The notes beneath the pieces were generated by a model that saw only the letters and a list, made by a program, of their open reading frames with translations, did not search any database and had not been told where the DNA came from. The position numbers were made by a program, and so were the translations under genes. Shown here piece after piece: positions 2,933 to 30,687 of a stretch of 64,000 bases of DNA. The stretch spans positions 11,222,001-11,286,000 of the forward strand of contig OZ059896.1 of assembly GCA_964057225.1 (NCBI GenBank), read 5' to 3'. How positions within the stretch are numbered: position 1 is the stretch's first letter; every line of letters begins with the position of its first letter. Source of the DNA: Auanema rhodensis (taxonomy: Eukaryota; Animalia; Nematoda).

Positions 2933-3516
2933 ATGTCAGCCAATTATCCTCAACGACACTACAGGTTAAAAGAATAACTTAAATTAACAACATAACAATG
3001 AATATTTACTTTTCTCTTCAATCAATTTTTTTAATTTCAGCTTATCAACTGTTCTTCTACTTATGTTTCTTTTCTCTACACTCCCAAATACTTCTGCTAA
3101 TGTTCGTTTGTGTGGGCAACGACTAACCAGAACATTATTATCGTTATGTCGAAATCAGCTGTGTGGTGGATTTGTTCATCAAGCAGGTAAGATAACTGTT
3201 TGCTTCTGATTCAACGATTTCACAATTTTTGAGTCAGCAATGACTTTGTTCCTGAAGTGAATAACTAAAATCTTTTTTATCCAATTTTAAGTCAAAAATC
3301 TTGTATTCAATAGAATAATATGCTTTGTAATAGAATAATATGTACAATTATTCATGATTTCCGTAAAATTTATTAATTCCAGTAGACACGGAATCAGCTT
3401 GGAAAAATCCTATTCTATCTATTCATCATTCGGTCAAACGAGATGGAATTGCTACACGATGTTGCATGAATAGATGTACCATCAGCTATTTGAAAACATA
3501 TTGCTGTGCTTCATAA
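2933..3516 (+). CDS. ins-1: INS-1-type insulin-like peptide (3 exons: 2933-2964, 3041-3186, 3383-3516; 103 aa)
   Basis: Spliced translation: signal peptide, B chain NVRLCGQRLTRTLLSLCRNQLCGG, linker ending KR, A chain DGIATRCCMNRCTISYLKTYCCAS*. The 8-Cys pattern matches nematode INS-1. GT-AG introns keep frame. TTCCAG acceptor ~40 nt before the ATG. Confidence 0.93.
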
Positions 3517-3788
3517 TTATTTTTATTTTACACAAATATTCAAATGAAGAAAATCAAGATTTATCATGTACTTATCTTCATTTGTTAACAAAATCTCCTG
3601 AACATCAAAGTACCGTCTTTATGGACGACATGGTTGCATTAATCCTCCATCATCAAGACACGAGTTTCGTTGTCATCATTCCAGCCACAATGTTAAAAGA
3701 ATTTTGCCATTTCCGCTTCAATTCTCCATTTCGGACTGTTTCCGTTTGAAGTTGGTTGATCCTCTCTTCCCAATGTATTCTCAACTGA

Positions 3789-4018
3789 TCTCTCTTTCTC
3801 TCTTTCTCCTCCTCCTTCTTCTTCTTTTTCACATTATTTTTTCTCTCATGCTCTCCGTGGATTTCTCGCATAGTTTAGGTCTCTCACACCACCTCTCACA
3901 CTATCTCTCTCTCTCTCTTTCTCTCTGTCTCTCCTTTTGATCTCTCTGTTCGCCTCTTCACCTTTCTCTATATCGTCTTCTTCCCATCTTCATCTCCTTG
4001 TCTCTGTTCCTAGCTCTA
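3789..4018. repeat. CT-rich low-complexity tract downstream of ins-1 (probable 3' UTR)
   Basis: Long (CT)n/polypyrimidine runs; AATAAA follows near 4073. Confidence 0.6.
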
Positions 4019-25554: not shown

Positions 25555-27969
25555 TTAATTTTTAGATTGAAACAATTTGCTTTTCAAAACAGCTATTTTT
25601 TCTGCTTGTGTTGAACAATTCATAAGTTCAGATTCATAAATACAAATTGGAGATTGTCCTAGTTTTTCTAATAACCTAATGGATAATTGTTCTGATCCAA
25701 GCAAATATTTTTTATTGGAACCGTCGTAGTCGCCGTAGTTCTATAAAAACAAATCATAAAACAGAAAAACACATTTTAATTTCTCACTTGCAAAGTATGT
25801 TGCCAAGATATGAATATAATCGGTACAACATTCTGCTCTTTTCCGACCCACTGAGATTTAGTGACTAATTTCCCATTCTATATAACAATATAATTTACGA
25901 ATTTTATATAATATACCTCAATCAAAACTTGATCGTCGATGAAAACTCCAGCACTATTGATACAGCTTCCGCCAAAATATGAAGATGGAGCAATCTAGAA
26001 GTAAATTTATGAATAATAATAACTCAAAAATTAAAATTACTTTATGTAATCCTCCCTTTACAAACATTTCATGATATGCTTCCACACCTTTTCCGAATCG
26101 AAGTTGCTTAGCTATAGTAACCTAAAAGGAATGAACGATGTTTTCAATAGGAGGAAGGATTGCTTGCATTCTTCGGGTCGTCCAAATTAATTCCAAACGA
26201 ATCTTTTGAAACTACTGGTCCACTATAACTACTTCCATGCTTATTTTTTACTACCTCTTGAATCTTAAGAATCCTTAACGCTATATATAACTTAGATGAT
26301 GAATTTGCACTGAAAAAAAAATAAATAAAGTTGTCTACAAGTAATTAAAACTTTTCGATTAGTTCACTGATGAAATCTTTGTGAAGAACTGTTTCAGCCA
26401 AAGAAGGTGTTAAACAGTCTTGCAAAGCTAAAGCGAAAATAAAATTTAGCCACGCACTTCCTGAAGTTGCACTTTCTCTCGTCATTTTTTTTGCCAATAA
26501 CTCAGCTGTGGGTTTGATACCCTGAAAAAAAAAATTGTTTCAGGTAACGCGGGAAAAACTAACATCTATGCCAGCAACAGCAAATCCACCAACAGCTCTA
26601 GACAGAACTGCTGGGCTAGCAGATTTTGAATTGGAGTTTACCCAATTGGATAAACATTGCCAAGAATCCGGGTTCCCTAATCGTAATCGAAAAACACAAA
26701 AATTAGTAATTTGAAGACTCATTCTTACCTGCTAAAGGAATCAACAAGACTTGAAACATCATTCCAGGATCTCAGTTGATTAACTTGCTTTCTTAGATCA
26801 ATATCAATTTTTCTCAACACTCGAGCATCAAAATATCTTAACTTAGCAAAAACAGAAGATAAATCCACGATTTGTTGAATCGTGAACAAATTTTTATTTC
26901 TGAAACAATTCCATATCGTTTTAATATGGTTACATATTAAAACGCCTTACTCAGTAATTCGTTGAATTGCAGGCTTAAGGAAAACAAGATCCCGTCTTTG
27001 ATGTAGTCCCAGGCACCTGAAATGTATCGAAATATATCTTGAGCTTTTTATCAATCACAATACCTTATAAACCCAATAATATGAGATACTGTCATTATTG
27101 GAAGTAAAGAAACAGCATGCTTGTAAACAGATTCACGCCAAGCATTAGAAGCAGGTCGATAATAAAGAAGTAAAGTAAGAAGATGAGCAGGATTATTCAG
27201 TGTCCTTAAATAAAGGCTTTTTAAAAAACACTAGATTATATTATTAACTTTATTTGTTCATGTATTGTTGTAGATATAACATCCTCTGCCTGTTTTGAAA
27301 ATTTATAATTAGTTGCTGTGGCTAAGTGGATCATCGGAATTAGAGCAGTTAGCACCGATTCACTTTTTTCCAAGTTAGCACAATTTTCTATATTATATAA
27401 TTATGTACAAATTATTTTATTGAAATACCATTCCAGAATTGCTCAACATCACGAAAACATTGAGTTTTGTTTAATCCTAATTTCAACAAAGATGTTAATA
27501 TTGGTATACAGTCTGCTACTATTAATTTTTTAGAAACCCTAGACCAACTCCTGTAATAGAAATCTGAGAAAAATTGTTGCAATATCTATAATACTCCTCT
27601 ATGATTTCATTGGAGATCTTAGAATCATCATGCAAAGTAGAAAACCCAAATAAAAGATCTTTCATTTGAGTGATTGATAAGACTGTTTGAGAATCAACCC
27701 ACTGAAATACAAAAAAAAAGATTTCCATTGTAAATGATAGAATTACTTTCTTAGCTTCATGGACTGATCGAAATTTAATAAAATCTGAAGAGCTCGTTGA
27801 GCTTGTTGAACATATATTTTCTTTCAAAACATCATCCACCATTTCTACATAAAATATATAGGAGCATACTAGGTGTTTATATACCAGTGAACACCGCCTC
27901 TTTGGACCCAACTGAACCTCCAGAAATAGCCCTTTTAACTAATAGTCCAGGCTTTAATATGCGCAGCAT
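25555..27969 (-). CDS. Mitochondrial FAST-kinase-family protein with C-terminal RAP domain
   Basis: Basic presequence-like MLRILKPGLLVKRAIS; C-terminus LLGSEQLSIRLLEKLGQSPICIYESELMNCSTQAEKIAVLKSKL resembles a RAP domain. Internal exons only partly traced. Confidence 0.65.
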
Positions 27970-28106
27970 TCTAAAAACCTAAAAGAACCCGACATTGATG
28001 AAATGCTATTCGATTGAAATATAGAACAGAATAAACTTCCAAAATAAAAACTTAATAAACAACAATTTTTATTCTTAACAAAACAACAAATTCTAACTGA
28101 ACATAA

Positions 28107-29000
28107 CTAAAGAAGAGCCGATGATTCAACTAAATGATTTCTAATAGCAGCATGAAGACATTCATGTACATCTGCAGTTACTTGCTTAGATGTTGCAATG
28201 AGAGTTGAAAAATGATCTACATGAACTCTATTTTGCAGCTCTACAAGAATAACGTCATCTTTGCCAGAAATAGTTGCTAGCTGGAATAAATTGAATTACA
28301 TACGAAAACGGATTAAGAGAGTACCGTAAGTCTAGGCAAAAGATCAGTTTCTTCTCGAGAATTAACGTCAACTACCGGTGTACCGTCAACTATGCCACAA
28401 GTGACAGCGGAAACGAGACCTTTCATTGGGATTCCAGCATCAGCCAAAGCCAATGATGCTGCATTTACACAAGCAGCAAGATGAGAACCATCGCCCTGCA
28501 ATAACTTTTATTTGGGGAAAAGGATAAAAACCTAACTTGAATAACTTCAAAGAAAATGTCAATCTGGGCTCTGGGAAAAGTGCTCGTAATAATAGCCGAT
28601 TCGAACGCTTTTTCAAGTAAGCGACCAAATTCGGTAGACTTTCGGTCACCACGAGGTCTATTTTTTCGATCAACAGAAGAAAACGTAGCCATACTAAATA
28701 TAATATTTTACATGTATTCATGCTCGTTAGCAAGCAAACCTATATTGGCAGTTTATGACACATTTATCTTCCAATTGTCTGGATCTTTTTCCTTCATGAG
28801 GACCGTACACAGCACAAAGAACCTAGAAACATTTCACATTAAAAAGAAATAGAATATTAGTTTGCTACCTTCGTGTTTCCTTGCTCTATGTATGAAGAAC
28901 CTTCGGCTTTGGGATATACTCCAAGTCTACAATTAATATTACGAATTTGATGAGGTCTACGACCATCTAATCTGAACCCATGTTCACTAATAACCATCAT
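28107..29000 (-). CDS. exos-4.1: Exosome subunit Rrp41/EXOSC4
   Basis: [22 protein letters not shown]...GSSYIEQGNT...VYGPHE...MATFSSVDRKNRPRGDRKS...GDGSHLAACVNAASLALADAGIPM. Confidence 0.95.
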
Positions 29001-29446
29001 TCTGAAAGCTTTCAATAATGATTAAAAAAAAAAAATTCTACCTGTCTGAGATTCGTTAACGGTATCTGTTATCTTGTTTTCTTCAACGTTTATTGGTGTT
29101 TTAGAAGATGATAATACGGACTCAGTAGGTGTAGCTTGGCCTTGTTTGAAAAGAACTTTTGGAGCTTGTTCAGCGAATACTAGCATAAGTCGGCGATTCA
29201 CTCGCATATGCTTGTCGATGCCTGAAGTATAAGAAATATTCCCCATTTACAAAAATTTCAAGCTTACAGTCACTGACGCACCGACTTTCCTGATTGTTTA
29301 GAAAATGCGAATTATAGTCACTCACACAAGATCCAAAACAACGCTCGGTTAAAGTATTATATACGGTGAGGAATTCTCTGAGCTATAAATATAATTTCCA
29401 ATACGGAATTCAAAAAATATTCTACCTGCGTTAAATCTTGACTCAT
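28997..29446 (-). CDS. tin-9.2: Small Tim chaperone (Tim9b/Tim10b-like, twin CX3C)
   Basis: MSQDLTQ|[39 protein letters not shown]|[12 protein letters not shown]. The stop is TGA 28997-28999 if intron 29002-29041 is spliced, or TAA 29022-29024 if it is retained. Confidence 0.88.
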
Positions 29447-29748
29447 AAAGAGTTGTATAGCAAGCTAAATATTAAATTATTTAATAATATTTTCTTAAAG
29501 TTTTTTATAAAGCAAATTTAATTAACTTTTGAAAATTTTAAATAGTAAGAATAATTTTTACCTACGTGCAGCTAAAAATGTTCGCAAATCTGTACGTAGT
29601 AAGAAATATTTCAAACTGTTGGAAAATGTAAATGCAAATACTTATGAATTATGTAGTTTTAGTAGTAATGATCCGTACTATGTTGTGTTGTGTTGTGTTG
29701 TATTCAATTTTAAAATATTAAATTTATTTACAATTACTTTTCAGTAAA

Positions 29749-30687
29749 ATGACTAATATAATAAAGTCTTCGTCTAATAATTTAATGTGTTCATTGGAGG
29801 AAATTAATTTCCGAACAAAACATAAGTTGGTGCATCCTTTGGAAAGCTTAAATCCGACTGCACCGCAGAAAGAACTTGTTCCCGATCGCAAAAAAATGGT
29901 GAAGGAGTATGTCCGACTTCCTGCAAATACAGCAACATGCTCTGGAAATTATGTTCGATCTCCTACCGTTCTTAAAGAAGCGACCTTATACCTATTAAAT
30001 GTCTTTCACGGGCTCAAAGAATCACAATTGGCTTTGTCGTATACATTTGTTTCAAATCGTTTACGAGCTGTTCGTCAAGACTTAATCGTGTCAAACAATT
30101 GGAATGCGGAAGCAATGCTTATATTGGAACAAATGATACCTTTCTATCTAGAAACTCTCCATTTGGGATTATCAACTATCTTTAGTTCATTTGATCTGAT
30201 TCTTCACTTAACAGAACTGCAGGAATGCTTTTCTAAGTGGTTTAACTGCTCTGGTTCTACGAAACGAAATGTTGATATTATAGCCAGTTTTTTATTGTAT
30301 ACTTATCATAGAACTTCGTATGATAGATCATATTTTTCTCTTCTACATACTTTACCAATGAGCTTGAAATCTCTTGTGCAGTCGTTATTATCATCTAATA
30401 GGAGTTGTAATTATGTTCATTATTTCAAGTTACTGAAGAGTATATCTTCAAAAACCATACTATATAGTACTGTATATTTGACAGAAGATATAAGAGTTCG
30501 TGCCACTGATGTAATTTCTATTGCATATAAAAGTAAAAATGCTCAATTACCTAAGGATATAGTCTGTAAATGGTTAGGGTATTCAGTATCTGATGATTTT
30601 GGTTTATCAGAATCGAATCTCATTTTAGTCTCTGATTTAAAAGTTAGTATTTCATCTTGTTGGCCCAAATCTCTTTTTAATATATAA
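29749..30687 (+). CDS. SAC3/GANP/THP3-domain protein (SAC3D1-like), single exon, 312 aa
   Basis: MCSLEEINFR...HPLE...MVKEYVR...RSPTVL...YTFVSNRLRAVRQDLIV are SAC3/GANP motifs; TTTTCAG lies 4 nt before the ATG. Confidence 0.85.
   Translation: MTNIIKSSSNNLMCSLEEINFRTKHKLVHPLESLNPTAPQKELVPDRKKMVKEYVRLPANTATCSGNYVRSPTVLKEATLYLLNVFHGLKESQLALSYTFVSNRLRAVRQDLIVSNNWNAEAMLILEQMIPFYLETLHLGLSTIFSSFDLILHLTELQECFSKWFNCSGSTKRNVDIIASFLLYTYHRTSYDRSYFSLLHTLPMSLKSLVQSLLSSNRSCNYVHYFKLLKSISSKTILYSTVYLTEDIRVRATDVISIAYKSKNAQLPKDIVCKWLGYSVSDDFGLSESNLILVSDLKVSISSCWPKSLFNI

What the first reader, a model, noticed from the sequence alone, without database searches (positions are those of the whole stretch)
28995..29045. 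tin-9.2 stop is created by splicing and lies inside the exos-4.1 ATGATG
Seen on the minus strand: ...CAG ACA G|gtagaa (40-nt intron 29002-29041) tttcag|AA TGA TG. Splicing gives ...Q-T-E-stop, with TGA (28997-28999) overlapping both exos-4.1 start codons (ATGA and TGATG). Retention gives ...GRIFFF* and leaves TTTCAG free for trans-splicing 1 nt before the ATG. I recall this pair being cited as dicistronic in C. elegans, so the pairing may be known; the exact double overlap and two possible Tim C-termini point to coupled translation (inference).
Basis: partly seen in the sequence, partly recalled or inferred. Interest (0 to 1): 0.72.

Follow-up and report, generated by a model that had tools for sequence, protein, structure and literature searches.

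The report
Two genes on one worm mRNA
In this roundworm a small mitochondrial import protein (Tim10B) and an RNA-exosome subunit (Rrp41) are carried on one spliced mRNA, with the first gene's stop codon lying inside the second gene's start; C. elegans already has this layout in its annotation, so what is added here is evidence on how the second protein gets translated.

Summary
On the minus strand a Tim10/DDP gene (ATG 29446) is followed by a 40-nt GT..AG segment (29041-29002), then A + ATGATG, the start of an RNase PH/Rrp41 gene. Spliced RNA contigs from four runs (one study) each skip exactly 29002-29041 and run from the Tim exons through all Rrp41 exons. So the donor is used, Tim ends ...QTE-TGA, and TGA (28999-28997) overlaps both ATGs.

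This is not new in kind. The C. elegans reference annotation has tin-9.2 and exos-4.1 CDSs overlapping by 4 nt (ATGA) across the homologous intron. C. elegans RNA contigs carry both ORFs behind one SL1 leader. C. briggsae calls its Tim10B 'CBR-EXOS-4.1 isoform b'. Other clade V-type nematodes share the layout; Steinernema and Bursaphelenchus do not.

I found no evidence for intron retention (GRIFFF*) or for trans-splicing at the TTTCAG, but contigs cannot exclude minor forms.

- Stop-to-start distance varies from -4 to +63 nt across species.
- All 8 dicistronic Tim starts have T at -3, and all 9 Rrp41 starts have a purine.
- Out-of-frame ATGs in the Tim ORF are depleted (5 vs 13 expected, P about 0.001).

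This favours leaky scanning. The scan has noted other dicistronic pairs in this genome (brk-1/nuo-3, NDUFAF8/UTP23, rpb-11/IWR1), but not this pair.

The parts
29426..29467 (-). Tim10B (tin-9.2-like) exon 1: 5' UTR seen from 29467, ATG at 29446-29444 in a weak context (ctctttATGa, T at -3), coding MSQDLTQ
   Evidence: (contigs X2 and X3 begin 42 nt before the 29426 joint)
29268..29382 (-). Tim10B exon 2 (115 nt) with the twin CX3C motif (CFGSC ... CVSDC). An exon of the same length is present in C. elegans, C. sp. 36, N. brasiliensis, A. ceylanicum and Steinernema
   Evidence: Pfam PF02953 E 9e-10; joints; exon threading
29042..29221 (-). Tim10B exon 3: conserved [27 protein letters not shown] followed by a variable tail ending ...NESQT + G
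29002..29041 (-). 40-nt cis-spliced intercistronic intron (GTAGAA...CTTTCAG). It contains no ATG and no AATAAA. If retained, Tim would end GRIFFF* (TAA 29024-29022)
   Evidence: joint 29042|29001 in 4 of 4 runs
28997..28999 (-). Tim10B stop codon TGA, read only after splicing (G|AA TGA). It overlaps both Rrp41 ATGs
28995..29000 (-). Rrp41 (exos-4.1-like) start ATGATG. The first ATG has A at -3 and the second has A at -3 and G at +4
   Evidence: tblastn of C. elegans EXOS-4.1 residues 1-45, 73% identity
28107..29001 (-). Rrp41/RNase PH coding region, 238 aa. Exons are 29001-28869, 28822-28740, 28693-28537, 28495-28325 and 28280-28107 (TAG 28109-28107)
   Evidence: Pfam PF01138 and PF03725; joints; colinear with C. 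elegans EXOS-4.1 residues 1-238, E 3e-62
28056..28106 (-). 3' UTR with AATAAA at 28073-28068. The longest RNA contig ends at 28056

Best explanation
Shown: Tim10B (the tin-9.2 orthologue, 106 aa) and Rrp41 (the exos-4.1 orthologue, 238 aa) are expressed as one mature dicistronic mRNA. The 40 nt between them is an ordinary cis-spliced intron. Removing it puts the Tim10B stop (TGA) inside the Rrp41 ATGATG. There is no poly(A) signal between the two ORFs. The mRNA ends after an AATAAA downstream of Rrp41. This layout is the orthologue of the annotated C. elegans tin-9.2/exos-4.1 locus and is shared by Caenorhabditis, strongylids and several unidentified nematodes. Inferred: Rrp41 is translated mainly by leaky scanning. 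A share of 40S subunits passes the weak Tim10B AUG (T at -3) and the only two other AUGs, both conserved in-frame Met codons with a pyrimidine at -3. These subunits then start at the first AUG in a good context, which is the Rrp41 AUG (A at -3). Termination-reinitiation at the overlapping stop/start may add to this where the overlap exists. I put the structural part at about 0.9 and leaky scanning as the main route at about 0.5.
For: Structure; 4 of 4 runs hold one contig joining Tim exons 1-3 to Rrp41 exons 1-5 through the joint 29042|29001; there is no AATAAA between the Tim stop and the ATG; in C. elegans the two CDSs overlap by 4 nt and RNA contigs read ...GAAAATAAACAATGAACATC; all 10 listed C. 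elegans contigs encoding EXOS-4.1 (four accession series) carry the Tim ORF upstream; contig L009 has a full SL1 upstream of tin-9.2 and runs through the junction; L024 also starts with an SL1 tail; dicistronic RNA contigs L013, L023, L024 and L025 come from other nematodes. Leaky scanning; the Tim ATG has T at -3 in 8 of 8 dicistronic species but A in both monocistronic clade IV species (Steinernema, Bursaphelenchus); the Rrp41 ATG has a purine at -3 in 9 of 9; out-of-frame ATGs in the 8 dicistronic Tim CDSs number 5 against 12.95 under synonymous-codon shuffling (P = 0.0012). The window itself has 0 against 2.1 (P = 0.036). The two monocistronic genes are not depleted. Every dicistronic Tim has only the two conserved internal Met codons, against 3 and 4 in the monocistronic ones. 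The few out-of-frame ATGs open ORFs of 2-6 codons; stop-to-start distance ranges from -4 to +63 nt, so a tight overlap is not required. Proteins of both ORFs are reported in C. elegans proteomic sets.
Against: All RNA evidence is from assembled contigs, which cannot show 5' ends, minor isoforms or that single molecules are full length. The four runs on the window belong to one study. The eight species are related, so the P value overstates independence. The -3 letters of the two internal Met codons are fixed by conserved Gln/His/Tyr and Leu/Phe residues and occur in monocistronic species too, so they are not independent signals. Only two monocistronic comparators were examined. Five of ten species examined keep a stop/start overlap (the window, C. 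elegans, C. sp. 36, L013, L024), which is also what termination-reinitiation would favour. C. elegans has a uATG 7 nt before the tin-9.2 ATG, which complicates a simple leaky-scanning picture. No translation data were available.
Confidence: 0.55

Rival explanations
1. Coupled translation by termination-reinitiation. Ribosomes that finish Tim10B at the TGA stay on the mRNA and restart at the overlapping ATG(s), so Rrp41 output is tied to Tim10B translation.
For: The stop overlaps the start in the window (ATGA and TGATG), in C. elegans and C. sp. 36 (ATGA) and in L013 and L024 (TAATG). In strongylid genomes the donor sits 0-1 nt after the stop, which would give short spacers if cis-spliced.
Against: RNA contigs of two other species have spacers of +32 nt (L023) and +63 nt (L025). 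The upstream ORF is 95-127 codons long, a length after which reinitiation is normally inefficient without a helper element (general knowledge). No UGGGA (TURBS motif 1) lies in the last roughly 200 nt before the restart site in any of 6 species. The Tim C-terminal tail and its RNA are poorly conserved. This model does not predict the weak Tim start context or the ATG depletion.
Confidence: 0.25
2. Alternative cis/trans use of the same acceptor. The TTTCAG at 29002 is also an SL trans-splice site. Rrp41 is made mainly from a monocistronic SL-capped mRNA, and the dicistronic mRNA serves only Tim10B.
For: Nematode 3' splice sites can accept spliced leaders, and the acceptor lies 1 nt before the ATG, as is typical of trans-spliced genes (general knowledge). 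Contigs drop minor forms (tool note). The next gene downstream shows ordinary operon-like spacing.
Against: A used donor lies 40 nt upstream. No contig in the 4 runs, and none of the 10 listed C. elegans contigs carrying EXOS-4.1, begins with a leader at this acceptor; the SL1 that was seen is upstream of tin-9.2. No poly(A) signal exists for a separate Tim mRNA. The ATG depletion and context pattern would have no reason to exist.
Confidence: 0.15
3. Assembly artefact: contigs chain two separate overlapping transcripts, and no molecule carries both ORFs.
For: The tool warns that a contig across two genes shows no single transcript.
Against: The joint 29042|29001 itself links Tim coding sequence to the Rrp41 start within one 31-mer path, so any molecule with it carries the Tim 3' end and the Rrp41 5' end. 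There is no 3'-end signal or promoter space in 40 nt. The same joined form occurs in independent C. elegans studies and in five other species.
Confidence: 0.03

Closest known systems
C. elegans tin-9.2 / exos-4.1 locus (chromosome IV, sequence name B0564.1)
   Same: It has the same two genes in the same order. A homologous short intron lies between the last Tim codons and the Rrp41 ATG. The Tim stop TGA is read after splicing and overlaps the ATG (ATGA). One SL1-led spliced RNA carries both ORFs.
   Different: C. elegans has a single ATG (M-N-I-I-S), so there is only the ATGA overlap, and its tail reads ...ENKQ* rather than ...SQTE*. Its unspliced reading stops at once (AAG TGA), where the window adds six residues. 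It has a uATG 7 nt before the Tim ATG. The flanking genes differ (dynein light intermediate chain upstream there; SAC3/GANP here).
Strongylid Tim10B-Rrp41 loci (Ancylostoma ceylanicum, Nippostrongylus brasiliensis, a metastrongylid-like RNA contig L025)
   Same: They have the same gene pair and an intron donor at the end of the Tim ORF, T at -3 of the Tim ATG and a purine at -3 of the Rrp41 ATG.
   Different: The stop codon lies before the donor (TAA G|GT, TAG|GT), so it is not reached by splicing and there is no overlap. A spacer of about 9 to 63 nt remains.
Leaky-scanning polycistronic mRNAs of green algae (Gallaher et al. 2021, PMC7896298)
   Same: Two independent ORFs lie on one capped mRNA. 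The start context of the upstream ORF sets the ratio of products, and leaky scanning is favoured over reinitiation.
   Different: That case is unrelated organisms and genes and was tested in vitro. Here the mechanism is inferred only from sequence comparison.
Viral termination-reinitiation (calicivirus TURBS, influenza B M1/BM2 UAAUG)
   Same: Overlapping stop/start pentamers or tetramers (UGAUG, AUGA, UAAUG).
   Different: No UGGGA motif was found. The overlap is not conserved among relatives. Comparison with these viral systems rests on general knowledge, not on a test here.
Nematode operons resolved by SL trans-splicing (SL2-type and SL1-type)
   Same: Neighbouring genes are co-transcribed from one promoter. 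The acceptor lies next to the downstream ATG. The gene after Rrp41 shows the usual spacing of about 80 nt.
   Different: Here the intercistronic RNA is removed by cis-splicing. No upstream 3' end is formed and no leader was seen on the downstream cistron, so the pair stays on one mRNA.

Membership tests
Small Tim, Tim10/DDP family (Tim10B / tin-9.2 orthologue) | Match to Pfam zf-Tim10_DDP above the curated cut-off | tested here: met
   Exon 2 alone scores 38.3 bits against a cut-off of 22.3
Small Tim, Tim10/DDP family (Tim10B / tin-9.2 orthologue) | Twin CX3C motif | tested here: met
   CFGSC and CVSDC are present in the translated exons
Small Tim, Tim10/DDP family (Tim10B / tin-9.2 orthologue) | Closest relatives are nematode Tim10B proteins, with shared exon structure | tested here: met
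   Hits are Tim10B of strongylids and Caenorhabditis. C. elegans TIN-9.2 by tblastn gives E 4e-17. The 115-nt exon 2 is conserved
RNase PH exosome subunit Rrp41 / EXOSC4 (exos-4.1 orthologue) | RNase_PH and RNase_PH_C domains, colinear with EXOS-4.1 | tested here: met
   PF01138 and PF03725 hit on separate exons. C. elegans EXOS-4.1 residues 1-238 align across all five exons, E 3e-62
True dicistronic mature mRNA | One spliced RNA carries both complete ORFs | tested here: met
   Single contigs of 999-1065 nt in 4 runs. They are contigs, not single reads
True dicistronic mature mRNA | No 3'-end formation or leader addition between the ORFs | tested here: inconclusive
   There is no AATAAA between the stop and the ATG, and no leader at the acceptor in any contig. 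Contigs cannot exclude minor forms
True dicistronic mature mRNA | Both proteins are translated from that mRNA | not testable with these tools
   Both proteins are reported in C. elegans proteomic sets, but the template mRNA is not shown
SL-resolved nematode operon pair | Upstream gene has its own poly(A) site and downstream gene receives SL2 or SL1 | tested here: not met
   No signal lies in the 40-nt gap, the gap is cis-spliced, and SL1 was seen only upstream of the Tim cistron
Termination-reinitiation dicistron | Stop and restart codons overlap or lie within a few nt, conserved among relatives | tested here: not met
   The overlap is present here and in 4 relatives, but the spacer is +32 nt in L023 and +63 nt in L025
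Termination-reinitiation dicistron | Upstream helper element (for example TURBS UGGGA) | tested here: not met
   No UGGGA in 6 species. Other kinds of element were not tested
Leaky-scanning dicistron | Weak context at the upstream AUG and good context at the downstream AUG | tested here: met
   T at -3 in 8 of 8 against A in 2 of 2 monocistronic species; downstream purine at -3 in 9 of 9
Leaky-scanning dicistron | Depletion of AUGs between the two starts | tested here: met
   5 out-of-frame ATGs against 12.95 expected, P = 0.0012. There are no extra Met codons. Residual ATGs open ORFs of 2-6 codons. Species are not independent
Leaky-scanning dicistron | Downstream output changes inversely with upstream start strength | not testable with these tools
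   Needs reporter or genome-edit experiments

The most novel reading that the evidence does not exclude
The Tim10B-Rrp41 pair is an old (clade V-wide) dicistronic animal mRNA under measurable selection for leaky scanning: a weak first AUG and an AUG-free first ORF. Together with the other small-mitochondrial-protein-first pairs that the scan has noted in this genome (NDUFAF8/UTP23, brk-1/nuo-3), it would form a class of nematode genes that escape SL trans-splicing and fix the ratio of a mitochondrial protein to a nuclear RNA-processing or respiratory protein at the level of start-codon choice. C. elegans shares the locus, so this would be directly testable by genome editing.
Probability: 0.4. 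Interest if true: 0.5.

Novelty: new member of a known kind. Interest (0 to 1): 0.3.

Why it matters
Nematodes are the textbook case of polycistronic pre-mRNAs that are cut into single-gene mRNAs by SL trans-splicing. This pair is instead kept together by cis-splicing, and the arrangement is conserved. It is therefore a natural, genetically tractable example (through the C. elegans orthologue) of how an animal ribosome makes two unrelated proteins from one capped mRNA. The comparative signature found here gives a concrete, falsifiable prediction: leaky scanning rather than coupling. For annotation it matters in practice, because gene predictors mis-join this pair. Teladorsagia P0003 and Oesophagostomum P0044 are fused models. 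The locus itself is not new: the layout is already in the C. elegans reference annotation.

Tried and rejected
Literature. Full-text searches used tin-9.2, exos-4.1, B0564.1, dicistronic/leaky scanning/nematode terms and brk-1 + nuo-3. None found a paper that discusses this pair as dicistronic. A remembered PMC id for the WormBook chapter on gene structure was not held. The 'known in C. elegans' statement therefore rests on the reference annotation and protein names and on PMC4631084, which lists B0564.1 as tin-9.2 with an RNA-decay role.

Reads. Only contig-type runs were offered, so 5' ends, leaders, the retained intron and relative levels could not be read.

Fusion or readthrough protein. 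Rejected: the two ORFs are in different frames, and spacing and frame vary among species.

TURBS-like motif. None found.

A separate Tim poly(A) site. The only nearby AATAAA (29094-29089) lies inside the Tim ORF, 47 nt before the donor, and the contigs run through it.

Organism. It is not C. elegans: Tim is about 45-67% identical and Rrp41 46-73% identical per exon. The GC content of 32%, introns of 40-46 nt and strongylid-like best hits suggest a clade V rhabditid. I could not name it and did not need to.

Exon threading. My first script chose spurious micro-exons and was replaced.

Joined models. The joined spliced protein models of the window genes were not sent to any search tool. Exons were searched singly by reference. 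Exons were concatenated only inside local scripts, to read frames and count ATGs.

Full report
What is in the sequence.
On the minus strand a three-exon gene starts at ATG 29446. Its exons are 29446-29426, 29382-29268 and 29221-29042. Exon 2 matches Pfam zf-Tim10_DDP (38 bits against a cut-off of 22) and carries the twin CX3C motif. After exon 3 come GTAGAA...CTTTCAG (29041-29002, 40 nt), one A (29001) and ATGATG (29000-28995). This opens a five-exon RNase PH gene (PF01138 and PF03725) of 238 aa that ends at TAG 28109-28107. An AATAAA lies at 28073-28068. Reading across the splice gives CAG ACA G|AA TGA, that is ...QTE-stop, with the TGA at 28999-28997 lying in ATGA and in TGATG. Reading without the splice gives GRIFFF-TAA (ORF 29022..29246). 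Every coordinate in the finding is correct.

Is the splice used?
One search for runs found four runs of one study that hold about 40% of the sampled words of the stretch, as expected for RNA lacking the introns. Laid on 27800-29900, each run has one contig of 999-1065 nt. That contig removes the two Tim introns, the 40-nt segment (joint 29042|29001, GT..AG on the minus strand, 135 letters on the shorter side) and all four Rrp41 introns. The longest one ends at 28056, 12 nt after the AATAAA. There is no AATAAA between the Tim stop and the Rrp41 ATG. The only nearby hexamer (29094-29089) is inside the Tim ORF and the contigs run through it. These are assembled contigs of one study. They show that the joined form exists and is the assembled path. 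They do not show its share, its 5' end, or the absence of minor forms. No retained-intron contig and no loose leader sequence were reported at this junction.

What it corresponds to.
The Tim exon 3 finds Tim10B proteins of strongylids and Caenorhabditis. A profile search adds C. elegans 'Tim10B' (P0015) and a C. briggsae Tim10B that its source names 'CBR-EXOS-4.1, isoform b'. In the C. elegans reference chromosome IV the Tim10B CDS (locus L005, 2501-2988) and the RNase PH CDS (2985-3977) overlap by 4 nt. The DNA reads ...GAA AAT AA|GTGAGA...TTTTGCAG|A CAA TGA AC. C. elegans RNA contigs read ...gaaaataaacaATGAacatc. All ten listed contigs that encode EXOS-4.1, from four accession series, have the Tim ORF upstream with the 4-nt overlap. 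One of them (L009) starts with the complete SL1 leader joined to the acceptor upstream of tin-9.2. PMC4631084 lists the sequence name B0564.1 as tin-9.2 with an RNA-decay function, which fits one gene name having covered both products. The window is not C. elegans, since per-exon protein identity is 45-73%, but its two genes are colinear orthologues. The feature is therefore the orthologue of an already annotated dicistronic locus. The ATGATG 'double overlap' exists only because residue 2 is Met here, where relatives have Asn, Ser or Lys.

How widely it occurs.
- Caenorhabditis sp. 36 has the same splice-then-stop layout (AA|GTGAC...TTTTCAG|ACAATGAAT).
- Ancylostoma ceylanicum, Nippostrongylus brasiliensis and a hookworm-like genomic contig have the same gene pair. 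In these the stop lies just before the donor (TAA G|GTAAGT, TAG|GTAAGT, TAA A|GTGAGT).
- RNA contigs of four further unidentified nematodes carry both ORFs. L013 and L024 have a TAATG overlap, L023 has a 32-nt spacer and L025 has a 63-nt spacer. L024 begins with an SL1 tail upstream of the Tim ORF.
- In Steinernema carpocapsae and Bursaphelenchus xylophilus no RNase PH gene follows Tim10B.

On this small sample the arrangement is a clade V-type trait.

How the second protein is most likely made.
I compared the mRNAs.

1. Start contexts. The Tim ATG has T at -3 in all eight dicistronic species for which the start is known: the window, C. elegans, C. sp. 36, N. brasiliensis, A. ceylanicum, L013, L023 and L024. 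Both monocistronic species have A. The Rrp41 ATG has a purine at -3 in nine of nine, and it is A in eight.

2. ATG content.
   - Every dicistronic Tim ORF has only the two family-conserved internal Met codons (DKxM, RRxM), each preceded by a pyrimidine at -3. The monocistronic ones have three and four.
   - Out-of-frame ATGs total 5 in the eight dicistronic ORFs against 12.95 under shuffling of synonymous codons (P = 0.0012). The window has 0 against 2.1 (P = 0.036).
   - Steinernema (3 against 2.5) and Bursaphelenchus (2 against 1.6) are not depleted.
   - The few out-of-frame ATGs open ORFs of 2-6 codons.
   - The 40-nt intron also lacks ATG.

3. Spacing. Stop-to-start distance ranges from -4 to +63 nt, so a tight overlap is not a conserved requirement.

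4. Helper element. No UGGGA (calicivirus-type) motif lies upstream of the junction in six species, and the Tim tail is poorly conserved.

These points are what leaky scanning predicts, and they resemble the algal polycistrons, where start context sets the product ratio (PMC7896298). They are not what coupling or a separate mRNA would predict.

Caveats. The species are related, only two monocistronic comparators were used, and the -3 letters of the internal Met codons follow from conserved residues. Half of the species do keep an overlap, so reinitiation may contribute. I rate leaky scanning about 0.5, coupling about 0.25, and a separate trans-spliced mRNA as the main template about 0.15.

What was not seen.
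The GRIFFF* form and a leader at the TTTCAG remain hypothetical. Retention and trans-splicing are also different fates. Trans-splicing at this acceptor would discard the Tim part without giving it a 3' end, because no poly(A) signal is present.

Context.
Contigs of the next gene on the minus strand begin at 27980 (ATG 27969), about 76 nt after the Rrp41 3' end. This is ordinary operon-like spacing, so the dicistron may itself be the first unit of a conventional operon. The scan's earlier notes (unchecked by me) list other candidate dicistronic pairs in this genome: brk-1/nuo-3 in this same window, NDUFAF8/UTP23 and rpb-11/IWR1. They do not list this pair.

Rule-bound omissions.
The joined spliced protein models of the window genes were not sent to any search tool, and exons were searched singly by reference.

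Verdict.
The locus is a new member (another species) of a known, annotated kind. The modest added value is the comparative evidence for leaky scanning and the breadth of conservation.

Noticed in passing
window 27969-27980 (minus strand): RNA contigs of the next gene on the minus strand begin at 27980, just after a TTCTTTTAG/GTTTTTAG acceptor pair, with ATG at 27969. This is about 76 nt beyond the Rrp41 mRNA end at 28056, which is operon-like spacing. In C. elegans, C. sp. 36, A. ceylanicum and N. brasiliensis the gene after exos-4.1 is a large protein with faint FAST-kinase-like hits about 200-700 nt downstream.
   Followed up: partly
window 29749-30687 (plus strand): A single-exon 312-aa ORF of the SAC3/GANP family (Pfam E 3e-32) diverges from the Tim10B gene, with about 280 nt between the Tim 5' end and its ATG. 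This could be a shared bidirectional promoter. C. elegans has a different neighbour (dynein light intermediate chain).
   Followed up: no
window 29089-29094 (minus strand): A canonical AATAAA lies inside the Tim10B ORF (codons P-I-N), 47 nt before the intercistronic donor. The RNA contigs run through it, so it appears not to be used as a major poly(A) signal.
   Followed up: partly
L009 80-126 / L005 about 2494: C. elegans tin-9.2 has an upstream ATG 7 nt before its start codon, out of frame. It opens a 13-codon uORF that overlaps the tin-9.2 start. The window and the other species examined lack it.
   Followed up: no
L011 / L012 (Bursaphelenchus xylophilus): There Tim10B is not followed by Rrp41. 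It lies downstream of a large gene with a DNA_pol_A_exo1 (3'-5' exonuclease) domain, and one Logan contig (L012, 3431 nt) spans both. I did not check whether that neighbour is an exosome-associated nuclease.
   Followed up: no
P0003 (Teladorsagia circumcincta), P0044 (Oesophagostomum dentatum): Deposited gene models join pieces of the two genes. P0003 has an Rrp41 N-terminus followed by the Tim10B exon 3. P0044 has a Tim10B N-terminus followed by RNase PH domains. These are probably prediction errors caused by the dicistronic layout.
   Followed up: no
this genome, other windows (scan notes s1-378791, s1-391279, s1-387513): In two of the other noted dicistronic candidates one cistron is a small mitochondrial protein: NDUFAF8 as the upstream cistron, ahead of UTP23, and nuo-3/NDUFA6 as the downstream cistron, after brk-1. 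Here Tim10B (mitochondrial) precedes an RNA-processing factor, much like NDUFAF8/UTP23. This may be coincidence or a class, and I did not test it.
   Followed up: no
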